A stretch of 63,662 nucleotides of DNA, filler included, from Octopus bimaculoides (lineage: Eukaryota): the NCBI RefSeq assembly GCF_001194135.2. It is 5 parts of 5 records of this genome, joined end to end, with 100 filler letters (N's around TTAATTAATTAA, not from the genome) between each part and the next. Parts side by side here need not be neighbours in the genome. Positions count along the whole stretch, not along the records: positions 1 to 23,168 come from NC_068984.1; 4 more parts are not named here. One strand, 5' to 3'. Under the pieces are notes generated by a model that was given only the letters and a program-made list of their open reading frames with translations, was not told where the DNA came from and made no database searches. Below are positions 561 through 22,333 of this stretch, in pieces; the first letter of the stretch is position 1; every line of letters starts with the position of its first letter. Position numbers and translations under genes: made by a program.

Positions 561-779
561 ATANNNNNNNNNNNNNNNNNNNNNNNNNNNNNNNNNNNNN
601 NNNNNNNNNNNNNNNNNNNNNNNNNNNNNNNNNNNNNNNNNNNNNNNNNNNNNNNNNNNNNNNNNNNNNNNNNNNNNNNNNNNNNNNNNNNNNTATATAT
701 ATGTCATTATACTACATGGTAGCGAGAATTGGGTACTGAATGCCGAAATTGTACAACAGTTTGAATGAATTAAAGGAAG

Positions 780-1040
780 CATGATTTGCAGGGTATGTAA
801 CGTTATGAGGCACTGACCACGAGATACGCTTGAGCTGAGACAAAGACTGGATACAAGAGTAAAGATTTGTAGCATGTAAAGAAAAAATGCTTGCTGCTAT
901 GGAAACATACTGCATGCAAATTATAACAGATGAGTAAAGACGATCCAGAGGATTCACAATGGAGGAATCAAATTTCAAGATGCTGAACTTCTGTCTGCGT
1001 GTACACGTCATTGAAGAAACTCTCAAAAGATCCAAATTCA
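780..1040 (+). mobile_element. Possible highly decayed RTE-type RT fragment
   Basis: CKEKMLAAMETYCMQII resembles the RTE post-RT motif (KxLxAFEMxCxRRI); there are many stops. Confidence 0.2.
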
Positions 1041-1231
1041 TCTGCCACAGCCGGGACTATTTGTCGTGTCACTCGTATATGCATTAGGTTTCTAAACACA
1101 CCATATCGTCTGAGATTTTATCTCGGATGAAAGCCGCAGCATATTACCTGTTAACAGTTTATATATATTAAGCATGGTACGCACGTGTCTCCCCTCTCTC
1201 TCTCTATCCCTATATATATATATATATATAA

Positions 1232-1305
1232 GTACTTGTTTCGGCAGTACATATATTAAAATTGGAACGATAGAGGGAAGATTAGCATGGCCTCTGCGCA
1301 AGGAT
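1232..1305 (+). pseudogene. U6: 3'-truncated U6 snRNA copy (about nt 1-74)
   Basis: GTACTTGTTTCGGCAGTACATATATTAAAATTGGAACGATAGAGGGAAGATTAGCATGGCCTCTGCGCAAGGAT matches the U6 5' stem-loop and downstream sequence. The ACAGAGA box is mutated to ATAGAGG and the 3' end is missing. Confidence 0.93.
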
Positions 1306-1309
1306 CTCA

Positions 1310-1373
1310 ACGGTGGTGCTCCAGCATGGCCGCAGCTTTGTAGCTGAAGGAATTTAAAGATTTAAAGATTTCT

Positions 1374-1375
<2 letters not shown>
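1310..1375 (+). mobile_element. SINE/LINE 3' tail fused to the U6 fragment
   Basis: GGTGGTGCTCCAGCATGGCCGCAGCTTTGTAGCTGAA followed by (TTTAAAGA)2 is homologous to the tail of the SINE-A copies in this window. Confidence 0.8.
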
Positions 1376-1423
<48 letters not shown>

Positions 1424-2687
1424 ATATTTGTGTGTGTATGTGCGCGCGTTGGCGTGTGTGTATTACATATATATGTAATTAACAAAACTGCCATGCAGCC
1501 TAGATAGCTAATTACCCAACCTTGTAGTTACCTAGCTGCATAACTGGATTGGATTACATGTCTTTTACCTGTATAAATGTATGCAACCGCACATACATAT
1601 GTCAAACCCATTGTAATGTGTTCGTGACCAAGTTCACTTAACTATTAAAATGTCCACTCTGAATAGGAGCTGCCCATTAGAAACATCTTAGCGTAGTGAA
1701 AGCATGGACTACTGGCTGATCGTCCTGTAACTCATGTACATGTAAATAAAAGACTATAATGCGTTATGTATAGTTAAATTATTTTCTTTACAGCTGTCCG
1801 ATTTTACAGTGCTTGAAGCTGAATGTATATAAACATTCATTCAATAATATTCTATCTGATGTAATCGAATTTTCCTGTTGTGATTGTAATTGCAAAGTTC
1901 TGATGTTGACGACAAGACAGCGACATTTACACGTTTCTTCATTCTTTCTTGTACTACACCTAGTAAATATGCGTACAATTACCACCAAGTAAAAATCTAT
2001 CCAATCGGCTACTTCCACACATTTTTCCTTATTTAGTTATAATACATTTTGTTGATAAGGAATTATTATGGGTTTTTAAAAAATATTTTATCAATTTTTT
2101 TTTTTTTGCAGATAACGTTTTCCACAAAAAGTTAGTAACATCATCGCCTTTTTATACATTTTTTAAATTTCTTTTATATGTTCAGAAATGATTAAATTCT
2201 GCATTTTAGGATTCTTTCTGTTGATAGACGCAAATAGAATTGCTTTTCTTTCTAAATTTGAGGTTCTAAATATCTTATATTTTTGGTATATTTTTAAAAA
2301 TATTTATTTCTGCTTTAGAGTGGGTTATTTCATCGATGGGAGTTCGTGTCTATCGGATCGCTTTGACAAGTTTTGTTTAAAATAGAAATGATTTTGTTGA
2401 AAATGAAAATGACATTTGGGAAATATTCTCTCTTATCGAATGAACTTTTCTTTCTAACAACTCACGTTCATCTGTCATAACTTTATTTAAACGTATAACA
2501 TAATTTGTGTTATAAATAACTGGTTTGTTGTTTAACAATAAACTACTGGTGAATATAGTTGGTGTTTTTACTGAGTTTCCTGTGTGCAATGTCTACTATT
2601 ATTGGAATCATGAGGGAATCTTCCACCTATTGCAACGATGAGCAGTGAGTGGTTAGAACAAAATTAACTGCCTTTTTATTAATTTGG

Positions 2688-2908
2688 CGCAAGGAGGTGA
2701 GTTGGTAGAATCCTTAAAACGCAGGACAAAATGCTTAGCGGCATTTCGTCCGTCTTTACCTTCATAATTCAAATTCCCCTGAGTCGAATTTTTCTTTCAT
2801 ATTTTCGGGGTCGATAAAATAAGTAGCACTTGAGAACCGGGGCCGATGTAATCGACCAGCCCCTTTCCCCCAAACTTCAGGCCTTGTGCCTATAACAGAA
2901 AAGATTTC
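2688..2908 (+). mobile_element. SINE-B (tRNA-like head, about 220 bp)
   Basis: Aligns with the copies at 39041, 48861 and 49089; ends CAGGCCTTGTGCCTATAACAGAAAAGATT. Confidence 0.85.
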
Positions 2909-4034
2909 TCAATTTAGCGTGAATCTGGTCGAGTATTGCAAGAATGCGGACCTCTTTATTTTAATACTAAAATCTAATCAGAGTGACACAGTGCAAGACA
3001 ACTTTAGACCCTTCTAGTTTAGATTCAATTCACTAAACAAGCTTCTACGCAATTTCTTTTTATCTAACTTCACCAAAAGGGCCTGAATTGACCTGAGTTA
3101 ATGGGGCGTCAACTTGTAAACGAGTCGGTCCTGTCTACGTTCATTAATATGATGAATCTCCTAAGAAATTCATAAAAATCCTATGTTTGTAAAAATGTAG
3201 GGCATATTGTACAGTAAAAGAGAAACTGATCAAACCACGAAAATGATAGCATATTCACATCGATGAACTGACTCAATTTACTGGCAATATTTTCCGTATA
3301 TTGCCAATGGCTATTATTTTAATATCTGCATTTTAAGTTCTTTAAGCCAAAACATCAAATTTTCCTGCGTTGCAAACTTTCTACTCGTGACAAAAAAGAA
3401 GAAAAGAAAAACCACCAATAAAAATTATTGATTTATGCTAAATTCGGGTGTATATAGTCGCCTTTTAGTTCTGGTAAAGATAAATTTATCATATTGTTGG
3501 AATAGATATAACAAGAAGTGTCTGTGTCCTATAACCTACTAAATTCTTTAAGATATTCTATGTATCTTGTTGCATAGTATTAATCATTGCACATTTTATA
3601 GAGATATGTTCGAGTGATACAGGTCTATATTTGGTTGACTGGAGCACTTTTGGTGATGTTGTTTTTGTTATTTTTATGAAACCTCCAGCTATGCTCTGTT
3701 TGAGTAGTGCTATGTAACGCTTTTAGACAGCAACAGATATTTTTTTACCAGTAATAGCATGTCTCCAACTAGCTGAAGACCATAAATCACATTACCCGTG
3801 ATTAATCGTATGGAATGTAGTGTGACAAGCTGTCTCTCTTCCACTGTCCAATCTATCTATTTCTGCATGTCTGTAAATCACGGAGATAGACAAAGATAGA
3901 CACGCAAAGTGGACTTAGTCTGAGTAACAGTTACTCTTCTGTAATTACTGTTCGTCGAGTGCACCTGAGCACTTTGTTTAGAGCAGTGAGTGCACTGCAC
4001 ATTTTCTATACTTAATGTGTAATATATTTTATTG

Positions 4035-4267
4035 TGTAGTAAGAAGCTTGCTTCCCAATCACATGGTTCGGGTTCAGCTCCGCTGCGTGGCGCCTTGGGC
4101 AAGTGTCTTCTACTATAGCCTCGGGCTGACCAAAGCCTTGTGAGTGGATTTAGTAGATGGAAACTGAAAGAAGCCCGCCATTTTTCTAACATTTTTCTGA
4201 CATAATTTAAATATATACTTTAACCAAGTAACACAAGCCTTCTGTAGTTTTTTCACTCTTATTATCT

Positions 4268-4302
<35 letters not shown>

Positions 4303-4520
4303 GTATCTGTCTGTGTGCGTGTCTTTTGTCTGCGTTTGTCCCTCCATCACCCCTTTACAACCGGTGTTGGTGTGTTTACATCCCAGTAACATAGTTGTTC
4401 GGCCAAAGAGGCCGATAGAATAAGTACCAGGCTTTAAAAAGTCCTGGGGTCGACTTAAAAACTTCAAGGCGGTGGTCCAACATGACCGCAGTCAAGTGAC
4501 TGTAACAAATAGAGGAATAA
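4035..4520 (+). mobile_element. SINE-A (tRNA head, CORE-like CCTTGGGCAAGTGTCTT body, internal microsatellite, stem-loop tail)
   Basis: Aligns with the near-intact copies at 21933 and 53020; the head is partly eroded. Confidence 0.85.
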
Positions 4521-4864
4521 AAAAAATGATTGCTTAAAGTACGTACTGTGGTGTCAACGTTGGTGATTGTGGTGTTGTCAAATAATAAAAATATTGATGC
4601 TGGCTTCTAATGGAGCTATGAAAATTAGGCTTTTTTTATCGAGGTTTTCTTTGGACGTTCGTCTGTCAGTGTTGTTATGATAATGGGAGACAACTGGGCG
4701 GTAAAGATATGGCAATGGCTGCGGTGTAAAAATGGGTAAAGCAGAAATGTTGCAATTGATTCGGTCAGCTTATGTGTGTCTTGTTCACCAACTGCAGACA
4801 TTTAGTTGCATTGTTATCACTCAAGCTTTCGCGTTACGAATATTTTCTGAGAACTGTATATAAC

Positions 4865-4985
4865 TTGCAGGCAAAATCGTTCTAGCGTTGGACGAAATGC
4901 CTAGCTGAATTCCTAACACTTTAAACTGCGTTCAAACTCCCCTGGGTCCAACTTTGTTTTTCATCTCTCCGGTTCAATAGTGTTA
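4865..4985 (+). mobile_element. Degenerate SINE-B fragment
   Basis: GGCAAAATCGTTCTAGCG...GAAATGCCTAGC...GTTCAAACTCCCC...CTTTGTTTTTCATC resembles the SINE-B 5' half. Confidence 0.5.
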
Positions 4986-5051
4986 AATTCCCTCAAAATT
5001 GCTGATCTATCTAATTCAGAAACAAGATACAGTATTTGAATATATATATGT

Positions 5052-5497
5052 GGAGGCGCAATGGCCCAGTGGTTAGGGCAGCGGACTCGCGGTCATAGGA
5101 TCGTGATTTCGATTCCCAGACCGGGCGTTGTGAGTGTTTATTGAGCGAAAACACCTAAAGCTCCACGAGGCTCCGACAAGGGATGGTANNNNNNNNNNTA
5201 TTGAGCGAAAACACCTAAAGCTCCACGAGGCTCCGACAAGGGATGGTAGCGAACCCTGCTGTACTCTTTCACGACAACTTTCTCTCACTCTTACTTCCTG
5301 TTTCTGTTGTGCCTGTAATTCAAAGGGCCAGCCTTGTCCCACTGTGTCATGCTAAATATGCCCGAGAACTACGTTAAGGGTACACATGTCTGTGGAGTGC
5401 TCAGCCACTTGCACGTTAATTTCACGAGCAGGCTGTTCCGTTGATCAGATCAACTGGAACCCTCGACGTCGTAAGCGACGGATTGCCAACAACAATA
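5052..5497 (+). mobile_element. SINE-C, tRNA-derived SINE with an (AAC)n tail
   Basis: A box TGGCCCAGTGG, B-box-like TTTCGATTCCC, about 440-bp body and CAACAACAATA tail. A 50-bp duplication flanks the internal 10-N gap. Confidence 0.85.
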
Positions 5498-9687: not shown

Positions 9688-10310
9688 CGAAGTGATGCTG
9701 AAAGGTTCCTGGCTTTGAGTAAAAGAAAACCCAGGAGGATCAGTTAATTATGATTTTATTCAACATATAGGCGCATGCGTGGCTGTGTGGTAAGAGGTTT
9801 GCTTCCCAACTACACGGTTCCGTGTTCTGTGCTACTGCGTGGCACCTTGGGCAGGAGTCTTCTTTTATAACTACGGGCCGACGAAAGCCTTGTGAGTGGA
9901 TTTGGTAGACGGAAACTAAGAGAAGCCCGCCGTCATATATATATATATAATATACTTAGGTTTGTGTGAATATATATTTATGTGTGTGTATTCACTTGAC
10001 AACTGATGTTTGTGTGCTTAAGTTCCTGTAACTTAGCAGTTCAGCAAAACAGAACGATGAAATAAGTACCAGGCTTACAAAGAATAAGTCCTGGGGTCGA
10101 TTTGTTCGACTAAAAGGCGGTGCTCCAGCATGGCTGCTGTCAAATAACTGAAACACATAAAAGAATGCAGGAATACTCCCCTCTCAGATTCACACTCTTA
10201 TTGCAGTGACTTTCAGTCTTCCTAAGCCCTGTAAAAGAACCCGGAAGATTGGGCCTCCTGTCATGTTTTTCGCGAAATCCTTAAAGCCAGAAACTTTTTA
10301 GCGCCCCTTG
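9688..10310. mobile_element. Mariner-type MITE interrupted by a SINE-A
   Basis: TA-flanked imperfect TIRs: TA|CGAAGTGATGCTGAAAGGTTCCTGGCTTT and AAAGCCAGAAACTTTTTAGCGCCCCTTG|TA. No ORF. Confidence 0.7.
9768..10165 (+). mobile_element. SINE-A, full length, nested in the MITE
   Basis: TAGGCGCATGCGTGGCTGTGTGGTAAG head through the GGCGGTGCTCCAGCATGG tail. Confidence 0.9.
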
Positions 10311-12266: not shown

Positions 12267-13629
12267 ACAAACCGTAGACGACCATAGAATCAGAGAAAGA
12301 CAGATAGAGAGAGGGGAGAAGAGAGAAGTGAGAGGGGTAAAGGGTGAGAGGCTATTGGCTGACAAGAGGAACCGAACACAGTCGTACTTACTATCAGCGT
12401 TATTATGTTTCGGTCGATGTAAACGACTGGAACTAATACAAATATTGAAATGGCAGGGACCACAAGCACTCACTCTTTCGAATTTACTCTCATCTACACT
12501 GAATCACAGAAGCTGCCCAATTAAATAACTAACAGCAACATAATTTCCCGACGTTCCTCATTACTTTCGCTTTCTTGGAACCGTTGCCTTCCATTCAAAC
12601 TATTAACAATAAAAGATGATGACATTGTTTTCATTTTTGTTAAACATACCTCCATGAATAGAACACCTAATAACTACAAAACACTAAGATAAACTCAAAA
12701 TAGTTTAGTTGTTAAAAAATCTCCGGCCACAAGGATTCCCAGAGATAAATATTTAAAATACATCGACTTCTAAAGTTGGAATTAATAGTCTGATTAGGTT
12801 TAATCATATTTCGATGAAGATTCAACTTTAACTATAAACAGTTCCGTTGTTTTAAACATACTAAAATAATTTAGTTGATCATATCCCTATGCCTGCATTT
12901 TGAACCATTGCAAGCATGCTAAAGAGGTCTTTATTTCATCATAAATGTCTCCTTTTGTTTCAGCAGAGCGTAATTCATCAGTTCTTATATGGTTATTGTA
13001 CGCTTTACGCAGACTAGTGCTAGACTTACTCCACGTGAAATCTACGATACATATTTCATTACCACTCGATACAGTTTATTTCGCTTTTTCTATTCGACAG
13101 TTCAACTGTAACACAATAACCTATATATTTTACTCTATATCTTTGACTCGCTATTTGAAAATATATTACTTGGTCTTGACCAGACAAACCATTTTTGCAA
13201 AAAGTTTTCACTTTCTTAAATTTCTCAATTCTGCTCTATAAGCATCTGAGTCTGTCAAAACATATCTGAATATTTCAACGTTAAAGGAAGCCATGCAGTG
13301 ATATTCAGTTGGTTGACGATCACAATAGATTCTAAGAGAAAGATAATGACTCATATAAATGAAATCAATGGATTTTCGGTCTGGTTTCGGAGATAGTATA
13401 TAATGAAAGCACTCAATGGAATGTATTATTATGATGGTTATACATTTAAAATTTGTATTGCCAGATTTTAGTATCTTCAATAGTTCTGAAGAAATTGCGG
13501 TTGTATATAAACAAAGCTATATATATATATATATATNNNNNNNNNNNNNNNNNNNNNNNNNNNNNNNNNNNNNNNNNNNNNNNNNNNNNNNNNNNNNNNN
13601 NNNNNNNNNNNNNNNNNNNNNNNNNNNNN

Positions 13630-16710: not shown

Positions 16711-16750
<40 letters not shown>

Positions 16751-16763
16751 CATATACATAGAG

Positions 16764-16794
<31 letters not shown>

Positions 16795-16844
16795 AACAGA
16801 GAGAGATATATGCGTGTGTATTTGAATGCTTGCAGGGTTACCTG

Positions 16845-16883
<39 letters not shown>

Positions 16884-17140
16884 CCGTGTTTCTGCGTGTT
16901 TGCGTGTTTATGTATGCGTGTTCCTGCGTTTGTGTGTTTGAGAAGGACAGAGAGAGAGAGAGAGAGAAAAGAAAGGGCGAGCGATANNNNNNNNNNNNNN
17001 NNNNNNNNNNNNNNNNNNNNNNNNNNNNNNNNNNNNNNNNNNNNNNNNNNNNNNNNNNNNNNNNNNNNNNNNNNNNNNNNNNNNNNNNNNNNNNNNNNNN
17101 NNNNNNNNNNNNNNNNNNNNNNNNNNNNNNNNNNNNNNNN

Positions 17141-17177
<37 letters not shown>

Positions 17178-17190
17178 CATATACATAGAG

Positions 17191-17221
<31 letters not shown>

Positions 17222-17271
17222 AACAGAGAGAGATATATGCGTGTGTATTTGAATGCTTGCAGGGTTACCTG

Positions 17272-17310
<39 letters not shown>

Positions 17311-18391
17311 CCGTGTTTCTGCGTGTTTGCGTGTTTATGTATGCGTGTTCCTGCGTTTGTGTGTTTGAGAAGGACAGAGAGAGAGAGAGAGAGAAAAGAA
17401 AGGGCGAGCGATACAGACAGAGAAACAGAGAGAAAAAGAGAGAGAAGGAGAGAGACAGCAGACAAACAAAGAGTGATTAAAAAGAAAGGGTAAGCCGGTG
17501 AGTGTGAATACATCACAAGCGACGGGGAGAGACAGAACTAGAGCTTTGGTCCGAATTAAAGATGATAGAGAGAGATATAGAAGGGGAATAACGATATTAA
17601 TTAGCAAATTTGGCAAATAGAATTATGATTAATTTCATAAATACAAAAGATTTCAAGCTGGAAATCAATTTACTATCAAACAAGTTCAAATATCGACGGA
17701 TATTACTTGTATCGTGGACAAAGTATATCGGTAATTATTATTGCACTTAGCATCGGTTGAATGGGCTGGTAGTGAGATCCTGCGACATGGCAACCTGTTA
17801 TTAGGTGGCTTTGAGAATTATATTGATTTCCTATGTCATGAAACCAATCGTCTATGATAGTTAGTGACCACTTCTCTACAAATCTCGGCGAATGATAAAC
17901 GCGAGAGAAGGGAAATGGAAGAAATTTGCATAGACAAACAGACAATGATATATGCATGAATGTATGTATGTATATAATTAAGTACATATATAAGTATAAG
18001 TATATANNNNNNNNNNNNNNNNNNNNNNNNNNNNNNNNNNNNNNNNNNNNNNNNNNNNNNNNNNNNNNNNNNNNNNNNNNNNNNNNNNNNNNNNNNNNNN
18101 NNNNNNNNNNNNNNNNNNNNNNNNNNNNNNNNNNNNNNNNNNNNNNNNNNNNNNNNNNNNNNNNNNNNNNNNNNNNNNNNNNNNNNNNNNNNNNNNNNNN
18201 NNNNNNNNNNNNNNNNNNNNNNNNNNNNNNNNNNNNNNNNNNNNNNNNNNNNNNNNNNNNNNNNNNNNNNNNNNNNNNNNNNNNNNNNNNNNNNNAGGGT
18301 AAAAAATTTGAAGTTAAGCAGCATGAATAAATGGAGCTTGTACGAAACGTACGTACTGCTATAACCTATTGAATTTTTGTTGCTTATCTTC

Positions 18392-19206: not shown

Positions 19207-20333
19207 AATTAGAATATATTAACAATCTATTTTATATTATACAAGGCAATGTAATATATAGTGTAAACATGTCGGGAATCATTCTAACATCGTCACTGTT
19301 TTTCCAAATCCTGCTGAATTCCGTTCGGAATTTTGGGTCCTCCTAATTCGTCTTGGCATATGTTGCGGTCTACCTTTTATAGTTGTAAATTTTGGTCTGC
19401 CTGAAAATACGGCAAATCAACGTGCATGCCTTTGAGGCATCAAATTGAATAAACGTAAGCTAATTCGTTACTTGTCTACTTTTATTTCCATCGGTATTTA
19501 TTTAACTAATGATCAGCATATTTCTAGAAGGTCTTTTCATTGACATGAAATGATACGATAATTTAAAAGGTTAAGGATTCATGTATTTAACACCAAAGTA
19601 ATGTATATGTTAAATTGCCTGCTAGAGAGACCACACCTTCCCTTCGTTAAGCCCATAGACTAAACTCGAAACTTTTATTTGAGCACGTCGCTGCAAACAA
19701 TGAACTATAGTACTGTGCACTCCCTGTATCTGCACTCTATCTCTCCTTATCTCATTCCACTCTCTCTCAATAAATAACATGGTTGGTTAATCATCAGATA
19801 TAGCATGTCACTTGAATGGGATGTGACTATTTTGAAATGTAACTCACTATAACAGAATGGTTGTGCTTGTTTCCGATATGATTTCGTATATTTGCAGCAA
19901 GCCTCTTCATTTATAGTCTTATATACTTAAAACTTCTTGCTCATACATCGTGGTAAAGGAATAGTTTAACCATGTTGCTCTTATGTATGGAATTGGTGTA
20001 AATCTTAGGAAGGTGAACCCTATATACATATATATATGTATATATATATATATATATATNNNNNNNNNNNNNNNNNNNNNNNNNNNNNNNNNNNNNNNNN
20101 NNNNNNNNNNNNNNNNNNNNNNNNNNNNNNNNNNNNNNNNNNNNNNCGTACGCACACGTACATACATGCATAAACACACCCACGTACTCATATATATATA
20201 TACGCATATATCTATCTATCTATATATATATAATGTACAACTCCGAGATTTACACTACACATAAACAAAAATATTCTCTCCCTCTCACACACACATGCAT
20301 ACACGCACACAAAGAGACACAAACGCACACAAG

Positions 20334-20590: not shown

Positions 20591-20678
20591 ACGCTGCAAA
20601 TTTTCTCTACATCCACTCATGAATAAACGAGGTCGTAGTGGTGTACCAATTCGCTTAGCTGATAAAACCAGACAGAAG
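20585..20678 (+). other. Candidate 94-nt exon (RS-exon, or first coding exon MNKRGRSGVPIRLADKTRQK from ATG 20619)
   Basis: Bounded by the strong acceptor and by AAG|GTAAGT at 20679. All three frames entering from the acceptor hit stops; the ATG frame is open exactly to the donor. Confidence 0.55.
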
Positions 20679-21932: not shown

Positions 21933-22333
21933 TAGGCGTAGGAGTGGCTGTGTGGTAAGTAACTAGTTCCGGGTTCAGTCCCACTGCGTGGCACCTTGGG
22001 CAGGTGCCTTCTACTATAACCTCGGGCCAACCAAAGCCTTCTGAGTGGATTTGGTAGACAGAAACTGAAAGAAGCCCGTCGTATATATGTATATATATAT
22101 ATATATGAGCGTGTGTATGTTTGTGTGTCTGTGTTTGTCCCCCAACATCGCTTGACAACAGATGCTGGTGTGTTTAGGTCCCCGTAACTTAGCGGTTCGG
22201 CATAAGAGACCGATAGAATAAGTACTAAGCTTACAAAGAATAAGTCCTGGGGTCGATTTGCTCGACTAAAGGTGGTGCTCCAGCATGGCCACAGTCAAAT
22301 GACTGAAACAAGTAAAAGAGTAAAAGAGTAAAA
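21933..22333 (+). mobile_element. SINE-A, young and near full length
   Basis: Head, CORE-like body, internal (TA)/(TG) tract and (GTAAAAGA)n tail. Confidence 0.92.

What the first reader, a model, noticed from the sequence alone, without database searches (positions are those of the whole stretch)
1232..1375. U6 snRNA head fused to the SINE/LINE 3' stem-loop tail: chimeric retrocopy or a U6-headed SINE
Seen: about 74 nt of U6 joined through CTCAAC to GGTGGTGCTCCAGCATGGCCGCAG...CTGAA and a (TTTAAAGA)2 tail, with (TA)n on both sides. The tail is the one that terminates SINE-A copies in this window. Established: U6-LINE chimeras form by template switching or RNA ligation in vertebrates, and snRNA-headed SINEs exist in crocodilians. 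Inference: a cephalopod LINE machinery recognising this tail captured U6. If the junction recurs, this is a U6-headed SINE family, which I do not know to be described in molluscs. U6 lacks an internal Pol III promoter, so amplification would need an explanation.
Basis: partly seen in the sequence, partly recalled or inferred. Interest (0 to 1): 0.75.

Follow-up and report, generated by a model that had tools for sequence, protein, structure and literature searches.

The report
Decayed U6 fused to a LINE/SINE tail
A dead copy of the first 72 bases of the U6 spliceosomal RNA is joined directly to the two-hairpin 3' "recognition tail" used by this genome's LINE/SINE retrotransposons; this kind of chimeric retrocopy is already known in vertebrates, and I could not test whether it founded a repeat family here.

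Summary
Rfam places U6 at 1232-1305 (66.3 bits, E 5.6e-15, model positions 1-72 of 105), starting exactly at U6 base 1. Its catalytic ACAGAGA box reads AGAGGGA, so it is a pseudogene. With no intervening DNA it runs into a 71-nt retrotransposon tail (1306-1376): two adjacent hairpins, then (TTTAAAGA)2. (TA)n lies on both sides.

The tail is not simply the SINE-A tail. Hairpin 1 (24 nt) matches two SINE-A copies with 1 and 3 mismatches; a third, more diverged tail aligns over the region. Hairpin 2 differs at 7 of 14 bases yet still pairs, with two base pairs changed on both sides. The 8-mer repeat also differs. The donor was therefore a related but distinct LINE or SINE lineage.

The missing U6 3' half is nowhere in the window, which argues against a nested insertion.

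Best reading: one retrotransposition event by a "stringent" LINE that copied its tail and then continued on U6 RNA. Such chimeras are documented in platypus and Anolis.

I could not count whether the junction recurs. A U6-headed SINE family stays open at roughly 30%. Interest is moderate to low.

The parts
1211..1231 (.). 5' flank: (TA)10 plus A. Possible target-site duplication or target microsatellite.
   Evidence: Read directly. A TA tract also lies 3' of the element, so the TSD cannot be delimited.
1232..1305 (+). U6 snRNA head, model positions 1-72 of 105. The 5' end is complete and the 3' third is missing. ACAGAGA is mutated to AGAGGGA.
   Evidence: Rfam RF00026, 66.3 bits, E 5.6e-15. 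No A or B box (best matches 3 and 4 mismatches) and no T4 run.
1306..1311 (+). CTCAAC, the first bases of the tail donor. It sits where SINE-A has CTCGACT (AAA) before hairpin 1; the resemblance is read by eye across a 3-4 base gap.
   Evidence: Read from the rows printed and; the aligner itself did not put CTCAAC in register with CTCGAC.
1311..1332 (+). Tail hairpin 1 (CGGU.GUGC[UCCA]GCAU.GCCG), shared with SINE-A tails.
   Evidence: Fold. 24-mer matches. Pair counts: 84% of cells paired.
1333..1346 (+). Tail hairpin 2, CAGCU[UUGU]AGCUG. The structure is kept but the sequence differs from SINE-A (CAGUC[AAAU]GACUG).
   Evidence: Fold. Two pairs changed on both sides, U-A to C-G and C-G to U-A. 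Variant unique in the window.
1353..1368 (+). (TTTAAAGA)2 terminal 8-nt tandem repeat. SINE-A has (GTAAAAGA)n at the same place.
1369..1376 (+). TTTCTGTT: a degenerate third repeat unit or the first bases of the target.
   Evidence: Read directly. Not resolved.
1377..1411 (.). 3' flank: (TA)17.5.
   Evidence: TRF.
22270..22333 (+). Comparator: tail of SINE-A copy 3 (runs into an N gap).
10115..10165 (+). Comparator: tail of SINE-A copy 2.
4467..4527 (+). Comparator: tail of SINE-A copy 1 (older, diverged).

Best explanation
This is a single-event chimeric retrocopy, now a decaying pseudogene. A 'stringent' LINE, one whose reverse transcriptase must bind a structured 3' tail (two hairpins plus an 8-nt repeat), began target-primed reverse transcription in a TA-rich site. 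The template was its own RNA or a dependent SINE's RNA. It copied about 71 nt of tail and then continued on U6 snRNA from about base 72 to base 1. It got there either by switching template inside U6 or because a U6 fragment had already been ligated to the tail RNA. The product has no internal Pol III promoter and a broken catalytic box, so it most likely never moved again. Shown here: the anatomy, the RNA-defined 5' end, the direct junction, the conserved tail structure, and the absence of the U6 3' half. Inferred: the order of events, the template switch, and singleton status.
For: U6 model positions 1-72 in sense orientation, starting at base 1. The tail follows directly, with no target DNA between the parts. 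The tail folds into two adjacent hairpins, as SINE-A tails do (z -2.4 and -2.7), with 86.5% of cells paired against 21-50% in slid controls. Hairpin 2 keeps pairing through two double-sided changes, as expected for an RT recognition element. The U6 3' half is absent from the whole window. There is no A or B box, whereas SINE-A heads have an A box at 1 mismatch. The catalytic box is mutated. Both flanks are (TA)n. Precedent: U6 chimeras with short L2, RTE, Mon-1 and AnolisSINE2 tails, attributed to template switching by stringent LINEs (PMC4476161).
Against: Singleton status is untested. Known U6 chimeras carry the U6 3' end: full-length U6 in human L1 chimeras (PMC11838501) and 5'-truncated U6 in platypus. 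Here the 3' third is missing, which looks more like a SINE head. The TSD cannot be delimited because both flanks are (TA)n. The partner LINE was not seen. An O. vulgaris repeat annotation lists one 'SINE/U' family of 369 kb (PMC13282606). The giant squid has about 1,300 U2-like loci (PMC6962438). snRNA-headed amplification in cephalopods is therefore plausible.
Confidence: 0.5

Rival explanations
1. It is one copy of a U6-headed SINE family. A founding U6(1-72)-tail chimera landed where it could be transcribed, and its RNA, carrying the LINE recognition tail, was amplified in trans.
For: Head-plus-tail architecture with a 3'-truncated small-RNA head, typical of SINEs. The tail belongs to a distinct lineage with a structure-preserving hairpin 2, so it could be a family-specific tail. 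There is no T4 Pol III terminator inside the 145 nt, though 48% of shuffles also lack one. A 'SINE/U' family is annotated in O. vulgaris, and U2-like loci are amplified in squid. Finding such an element in a single 23-kb window is more likely if copies are numerous (inference).
Against: There is no second copy of the head or of this tail variant in the 23 kb. There is no internal promoter. No paper in the library describes a U6-derived SINE. The recent 'SINE/U' insertions in O. vulgaris average about 730 bp, unlike this 145-nt unit. U6 was not among the inflated counts reported for squid.
Confidence: 0.3
2. Two independent events produced it. Either a 5'-truncated LINE/SINE tail inserted into or next to an older U6 pseudogene, or a 3'-truncated U6 retrocopy landed beside an existing tail fragment in the same (TA)n tract.
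For: (TA)n tracts look like favoured targets: TA tracts cover about 2% of the window, yet they flank this element. 3'-truncated, tailless U6 retrocopies exist in other animals (25 in Anolis).
Against: No (TA)n or any other target DNA lies between the parts. The U6 3' half that a nested insertion would displace downstream is absent. A stringent LINE would not mobilise a tail-less U6. Exact abutment by chance is improbable.
Confidence: 0.08
3. It is an assembly artefact: a false join of a U6 copy and a SINE tail in a gapped short-read assembly.
For: The piece has seven N gaps and two exact duplications beside gaps, so the assembly is imperfect.
Against: The element lies in a gap-free stretch, 694-5188. 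The longest word shared by the U6 and tail parts is 9 nt, which I take to be shorter than any assembly k-mer, and it is not at the junction.
Confidence: 0.04

Closest known systems
U6 chimeras with stringent LINEs and their SINEs: U6-L2 and U6-Mon-1 in platypus; U6-L2, U6-RTE and U6-AnolisSINE2 in Anolis (Doucet et al. 2015, PMC4476161)
   Same: Sense U6 joined directly to a short 3' end of a LINE or SINE whose RT needs a structured tail ending in a simple repeat. TSDs are small or unclear. Attributed to template switching.
   Different: In platypus the U6 is mostly 5'-truncated. Here the 5' end is complete and the 3' third is missing. The host is an invertebrate; I take it to be an octopus from memory of its SINEs, and that was not tested.
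Human and mammalian U6/L1 chimeric retrotranscripts (Buzdin 2002; Garcia-Perez 2007; PMC11838501)
   Same: U6 lies 5' of a 5'-truncated LINE 3' end, in sense orientation, as one insertion.
   Different: In L1 chimeras the U6 is consistently full length, fitting ligation at the U6 3' end, and the insertion ends in poly(A). Here U6 stops at model position 72 and the tail is two hairpins plus an 8-mer repeat.
SINEU, the U1/U2 snRNA-headed SINEs of crocodilians (Kojima 2015, PMC4494074)
   Same: An snRNA fragment serves as head, with a retrotransposon-type tail and no internal Pol III promoter. The founder is thought to have arisen by template switching.
   Different: SINEU heads are U1 or U2, not U6. 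SINEU is shown to be multi-copy with subfamilies and master copies. Copy number could not be tested here.
CR1- and L2-type SINE/LINE tails in molluscs (MetaSINE paper, PMC4824008)
   Same: Conserved 3' stem-loops with compensatory changes between SINE and LINE tails, as between this tail and SINE-A.
   Different: The partner LINE and its clade were not identified here. The 8-nt terminal repeat resembles the CR1 type only from memory.

Membership tests
Functional U6 snRNA gene | Full-length RNA (about 105-107 nt) with the 3' telestem region and a terminal U tract | tested here: not met
   Only model positions 1-72/105 match. The 3' half is absent from the window.
Functional U6 snRNA gene | Invariant ACAGAGA box | tested here: not met
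   It reads AGAGGGA (alignment). The AGC triad is intact.
U6/LINE (or SINE) chimeric retrocopy | U6 in sense orientation directly 5' of a LINE/SINE 3' terminus, with no target DNA between them | tested here: met
U6/LINE (or SINE) chimeric retrocopy | The 3' part is the genuine 3' terminus of a retrotransposon active in the same genome | tested here: inconclusive
   Hairpin 1 and the layout match two SINE-A tails within 3 mismatches, plus a third, more diverged one. Hairpin 2 and the 8-mer are of another lineage, and that source element was not seen.
U6/LINE (or SINE) chimeric retrocopy | One target-site duplication encloses the whole chimera | tested here: inconclusive
   Both flanks are (TA)n. 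This is compatible with a TA-repeat TSD of up to about 20 nt, but it cannot be delimited.
U6/LINE (or SINE) chimeric retrocopy | An RNA-defined end of the U6 part | tested here: met
   The match starts at model position 1, window 1232.
SINE (snRNA-headed, SINEU-like) | Many copies share the same head-tail junction at different loci, each with its own TSD | not testable with these tools
   There is no second copy in the window. The protein, metagenome and viral routes found nothing relevant.
SINE (snRNA-headed, SINEU-like) | A LINE-derived 3' tail that allows mobilisation in trans | tested here: met
   Two-hairpin tail plus 8-mer repeat, as in SINE-A.
Classical Pol III SINE (tRNA, 7SL or 5S head) | Internal A and B box promoter | tested here: not met
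   The best A box has 3 mismatches and the best B box has 4. SINE-A heads have an A box at 1 mismatch.

The most novel reading that the evidence does not exclude
The element is a member of a so-far undescribed U6-headed SINE family in octopuses. It would be a SINE whose head lacks an internal promoter and is truncated within the 3' strand of the U6 internal stem-loop, mobilised through a lineage-specific two-hairpin LINE tail.
Probability: 0.3. Interest if true: 0.65.

Novelty: new member of a known kind. Interest (0 to 1): 0.35.

Why it matters
As a singleton, it extends to a mollusc what is documented in amniotes: LINEs that need a structured 3' tail still capture U6 RNA. It does so with an unusual internal junction in U6, which bears modestly on the debate between template switching and RNA ligation. 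It also shows that at least two tail lineages with a co-varying distal hairpin coexist in this genome, which helps in pairing SINEs with their LINE partners. If the junction recurs, it would be a new SINE class, and it would raise the question of how a promoter-less head gets transcribed.

Tried and rejected
2. Searching the 5.8-billion-protein set with the open minus-strand frame through the element found only an unrelated U6 antisense ORF.
3. The same search with a SINE-A ORF, as a control for octopus non-coding ORFs, found no candidate. That database therefore cannot sample this genome, and I left the third search unused.
4. Exact look-up of 10 window ORFs found none in the collection.
5. 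The metagenome scan for U6...tail junctions gave one hit, a GC-rich bacterial contig with no U6.
6. The viral-contig scan for hairpin 1 gave 0 hits.
7. A full-text search for the tail sequence found 0 papers, and a search for a 'U6-derived' SINE found none.
8. No LINE coding fragment is apparent among the stop-to-stop frames (read by eye; no profile search run), so the partner LINE could not be fetched.
9. Idea that the tail itself derives from U6, based on the shared 9-mer AGCATGGCC: the local alignment is not significant (p 0.03-0.09). Rejected as chance.
10. Idea that the chimera sits in the internal microsatellite of an older SINE-A: the flanks do not match the SINE-A body. Rejected.
11. 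A site-specific element inserted in a U6 gene: rejected, because the U6 3' half is absent.

Full report
**Observation**

Rfam's U6 model matches 1232-1305 on the + strand at 66.3 bits (gathering score 44, E 5.6e-15). The match covers model positions 1-72 of 105 and starts at U6 base 1. It is the only U6 signal in the piece, even at E<=1; every other sub-threshold hit lies on microsatellites.

The 5' stem-loop still pairs. At highly conserved positions the copy differs from the consensus three or four times. ACAGAGA reads AGAGGGA and GGCCCCUG reads GGCCUCUG. It is therefore a decayed pseudogene.

Immediately after ...GCGCAAGGAT comes CTCAAC GGTGGTGCTCCAGCATGGCCGCAG CTTTGTAGCTGAA GGAA (TTTAAAGA)2 TTTCTGTT. 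(TA)10 lies upstream and (TA)17.5 downstream.

**The tail**

The 24-mer of the tail recurs at 22271 (1 mismatch) and at 10116 (3 mismatches). No match was expected by chance. A more diverged copy lies near 4468. All three are the 3' ends of a tRNA-headed SINE ('SINE-A'), whose A box TGGCTGTGTGG is seen.

Folding gives the same layout in the chimera and in the best SINE-A copy: two adjacent hairpins followed by an 8-nt tandem repeat. The z-scores are -2.4 and -2.7. On the four-sequence alignment, 86.5% of cells pair, against 21-50% when the 3' partners are slid.

The tails are not identical, however. Hairpin 1 is shared. Hairpin 2 differs at 7 of 14 bases (CAGCU[UUGU]AGCUG against CAGUC[AAAU]GACUG) while the adjacent 24 nt are unchanged, and two pairs change on both sides: U-A to C-G and C-G to U-A. 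With only four sequences this covariation is not statistically strong, since 160 of 500 shuffles reach it. A block of 7/14 changes beside 0/24 is still not random decay.

The terminal repeat also differs, TTTAAAGA against GTAAAAGA. The variant occurs nowhere else in the window. The donor was therefore a related but distinct LINE or SINE lineage, not SINE-A itself.

The six bases CTCAAC sit where SINE-A has CTCGACT (AAA) before hairpin 1. By eye, across a 3-4 base gap, they look donor-derived rather than filler.

**What it is**

Several features together are the signature of an RNA-derived chimera made in one retrotransposition event:
- The 5' end is defined by the RNA (U6 base 1).
- U6 is in sense orientation.
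- The junction is direct.
- The 3' end is a complete retrotransposon terminus.

A nested insertion into a U6 copy would leave the U6 3' half downstream. It is absent from the whole window.

A misassembly is unlikely. The element lies in a gap-free stretch. The longest word shared by the two parts is 9 nt, and it is not at the junction.

Both flanks are (TA)n. This fits insertion into a TA microsatellite, but the TSD cannot be delimited. TA tracts cover only about 2% of the window. That hints at a target preference; this is inference.

**Mechanism**

This section is inferred, with precedent. A stringent LINE's reverse transcriptase binds the two-hairpin tail and primes on the nicked target. It copies about 71 nt and then continues on U6 from about base 72 to base 1. 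It reaches U6 either by template switching or because a U6 fragment was already ligated to the tail RNA.

Doucet et al. (PMC4476161) documented this class of product for L2, RTE, Mon-1 and AnolisSINE2 in platypus and Anolis. They attributed it to template switching by stringent LINEs.

The difference here is that the U6 3' third is missing. Human U6/L1 chimeras carry full-length U6 (PMC11838501), and platypus ones are mostly 5'-truncated. From established U6 structure, recalled rather than tested, the last U6 base lies in the 3' strand of the internal stem-loop.

From three to four substitutions at about 50 near-invariant positions (roughly 6-8%), and the rate implied in PMC13282606 (JC 0.065 is about 18 My), the insertion is roughly 20 My old. 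The Poisson error on that figure is very wide. This is inference.

**Singleton or SINE family**

This is the crux, and I could not test it. The protein collection holds no ORFs from this genome's repeats. The metagenome scan gave one chance bacterial hit. The viral scan gave none.

Against a family:
- There is no second copy in 23 kb.
- There are no A or B boxes.
- No paper in the library describes a U6-derived SINE.

For a family:
- The head is 3'-truncated, as SINE heads often are.
- The tail is lineage-specific.
- O. vulgaris has an annotated but undescribed 'SINE/U' family of 369 kb.
- The giant squid has about 1,300 U2-like loci, for which the authors suspect SINEs.

I put the singleton at about 0.5 and the family at about 0.3.

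**Verdict**

The feature is real and is correctly described apart from the tail's identity. It is best filed as a new member of a known kind: a U6/stringent-LINE-tail chimeric retrocopy, probably in an octopus genome. The host assignment comes from my memory of its SINEs and was not tested. Interest is moderate to low unless the junction proves recurrent.

Noticed in passing
window 4040-4527, 9770-10165, 21935-22333: Three + strand copies of a tRNA-headed SINE ('SINE-A'). Each has the A box TGGCTGTGTGG, an internal (TA)n/(TG)n microsatellite, and a two-hairpin tail plus (GTAAAAGA)n. Copies are 80-85% alike.
   Followed up: partly
window 5053-5450 (+): A second, different tRNA-derived SINE. It has a perfect A box TGGCCCAGTGG at 5062 and a B-like GATTTCGATTCCC. 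It is interrupted by a 10-N gap.
   Followed up: no
window 5139-5188 = 5199-5248; 16714-16986 = 17141-17413: Exact 50-nt and 273-nt duplications lie on either side of N gaps. They look like gap-closing or scaffolding artefacts. The long 'inverted repeats' reported around 13504-13629, 17052-17177 and 20021-20146 are mostly or wholly N runs.
   Followed up: partly
window 20607-20669 (+): A 21-codon ORF starts with ATG and ends at a consensus splice donor (CAGAAG|gtaagt): MNKRGRSGVPIRLADKTRQK. It may be a first coding exon.
   Followed up: no
window 1284-1292 and 1323-1331 (also 22282-22290): The 9-mer AGCATGGCC, which includes the U6 AGC triad, occurs both in the U6 head and in tail hairpin 1 and a SINE-A tail. 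It appears in 1.5% of shuffles, and the local alignment gives p 0.03-0.09. It is probably chance and is not at the junction.
   Followed up: yes
whole window: Microsatellite density is very high (60 TRF rows; TA, TG/AC, TCTA, TATC, TCTG and AG arrays). These arrays produce dozens of spurious sub-threshold Rfam miRNA and snoRNA hits.
   Followed up: partly
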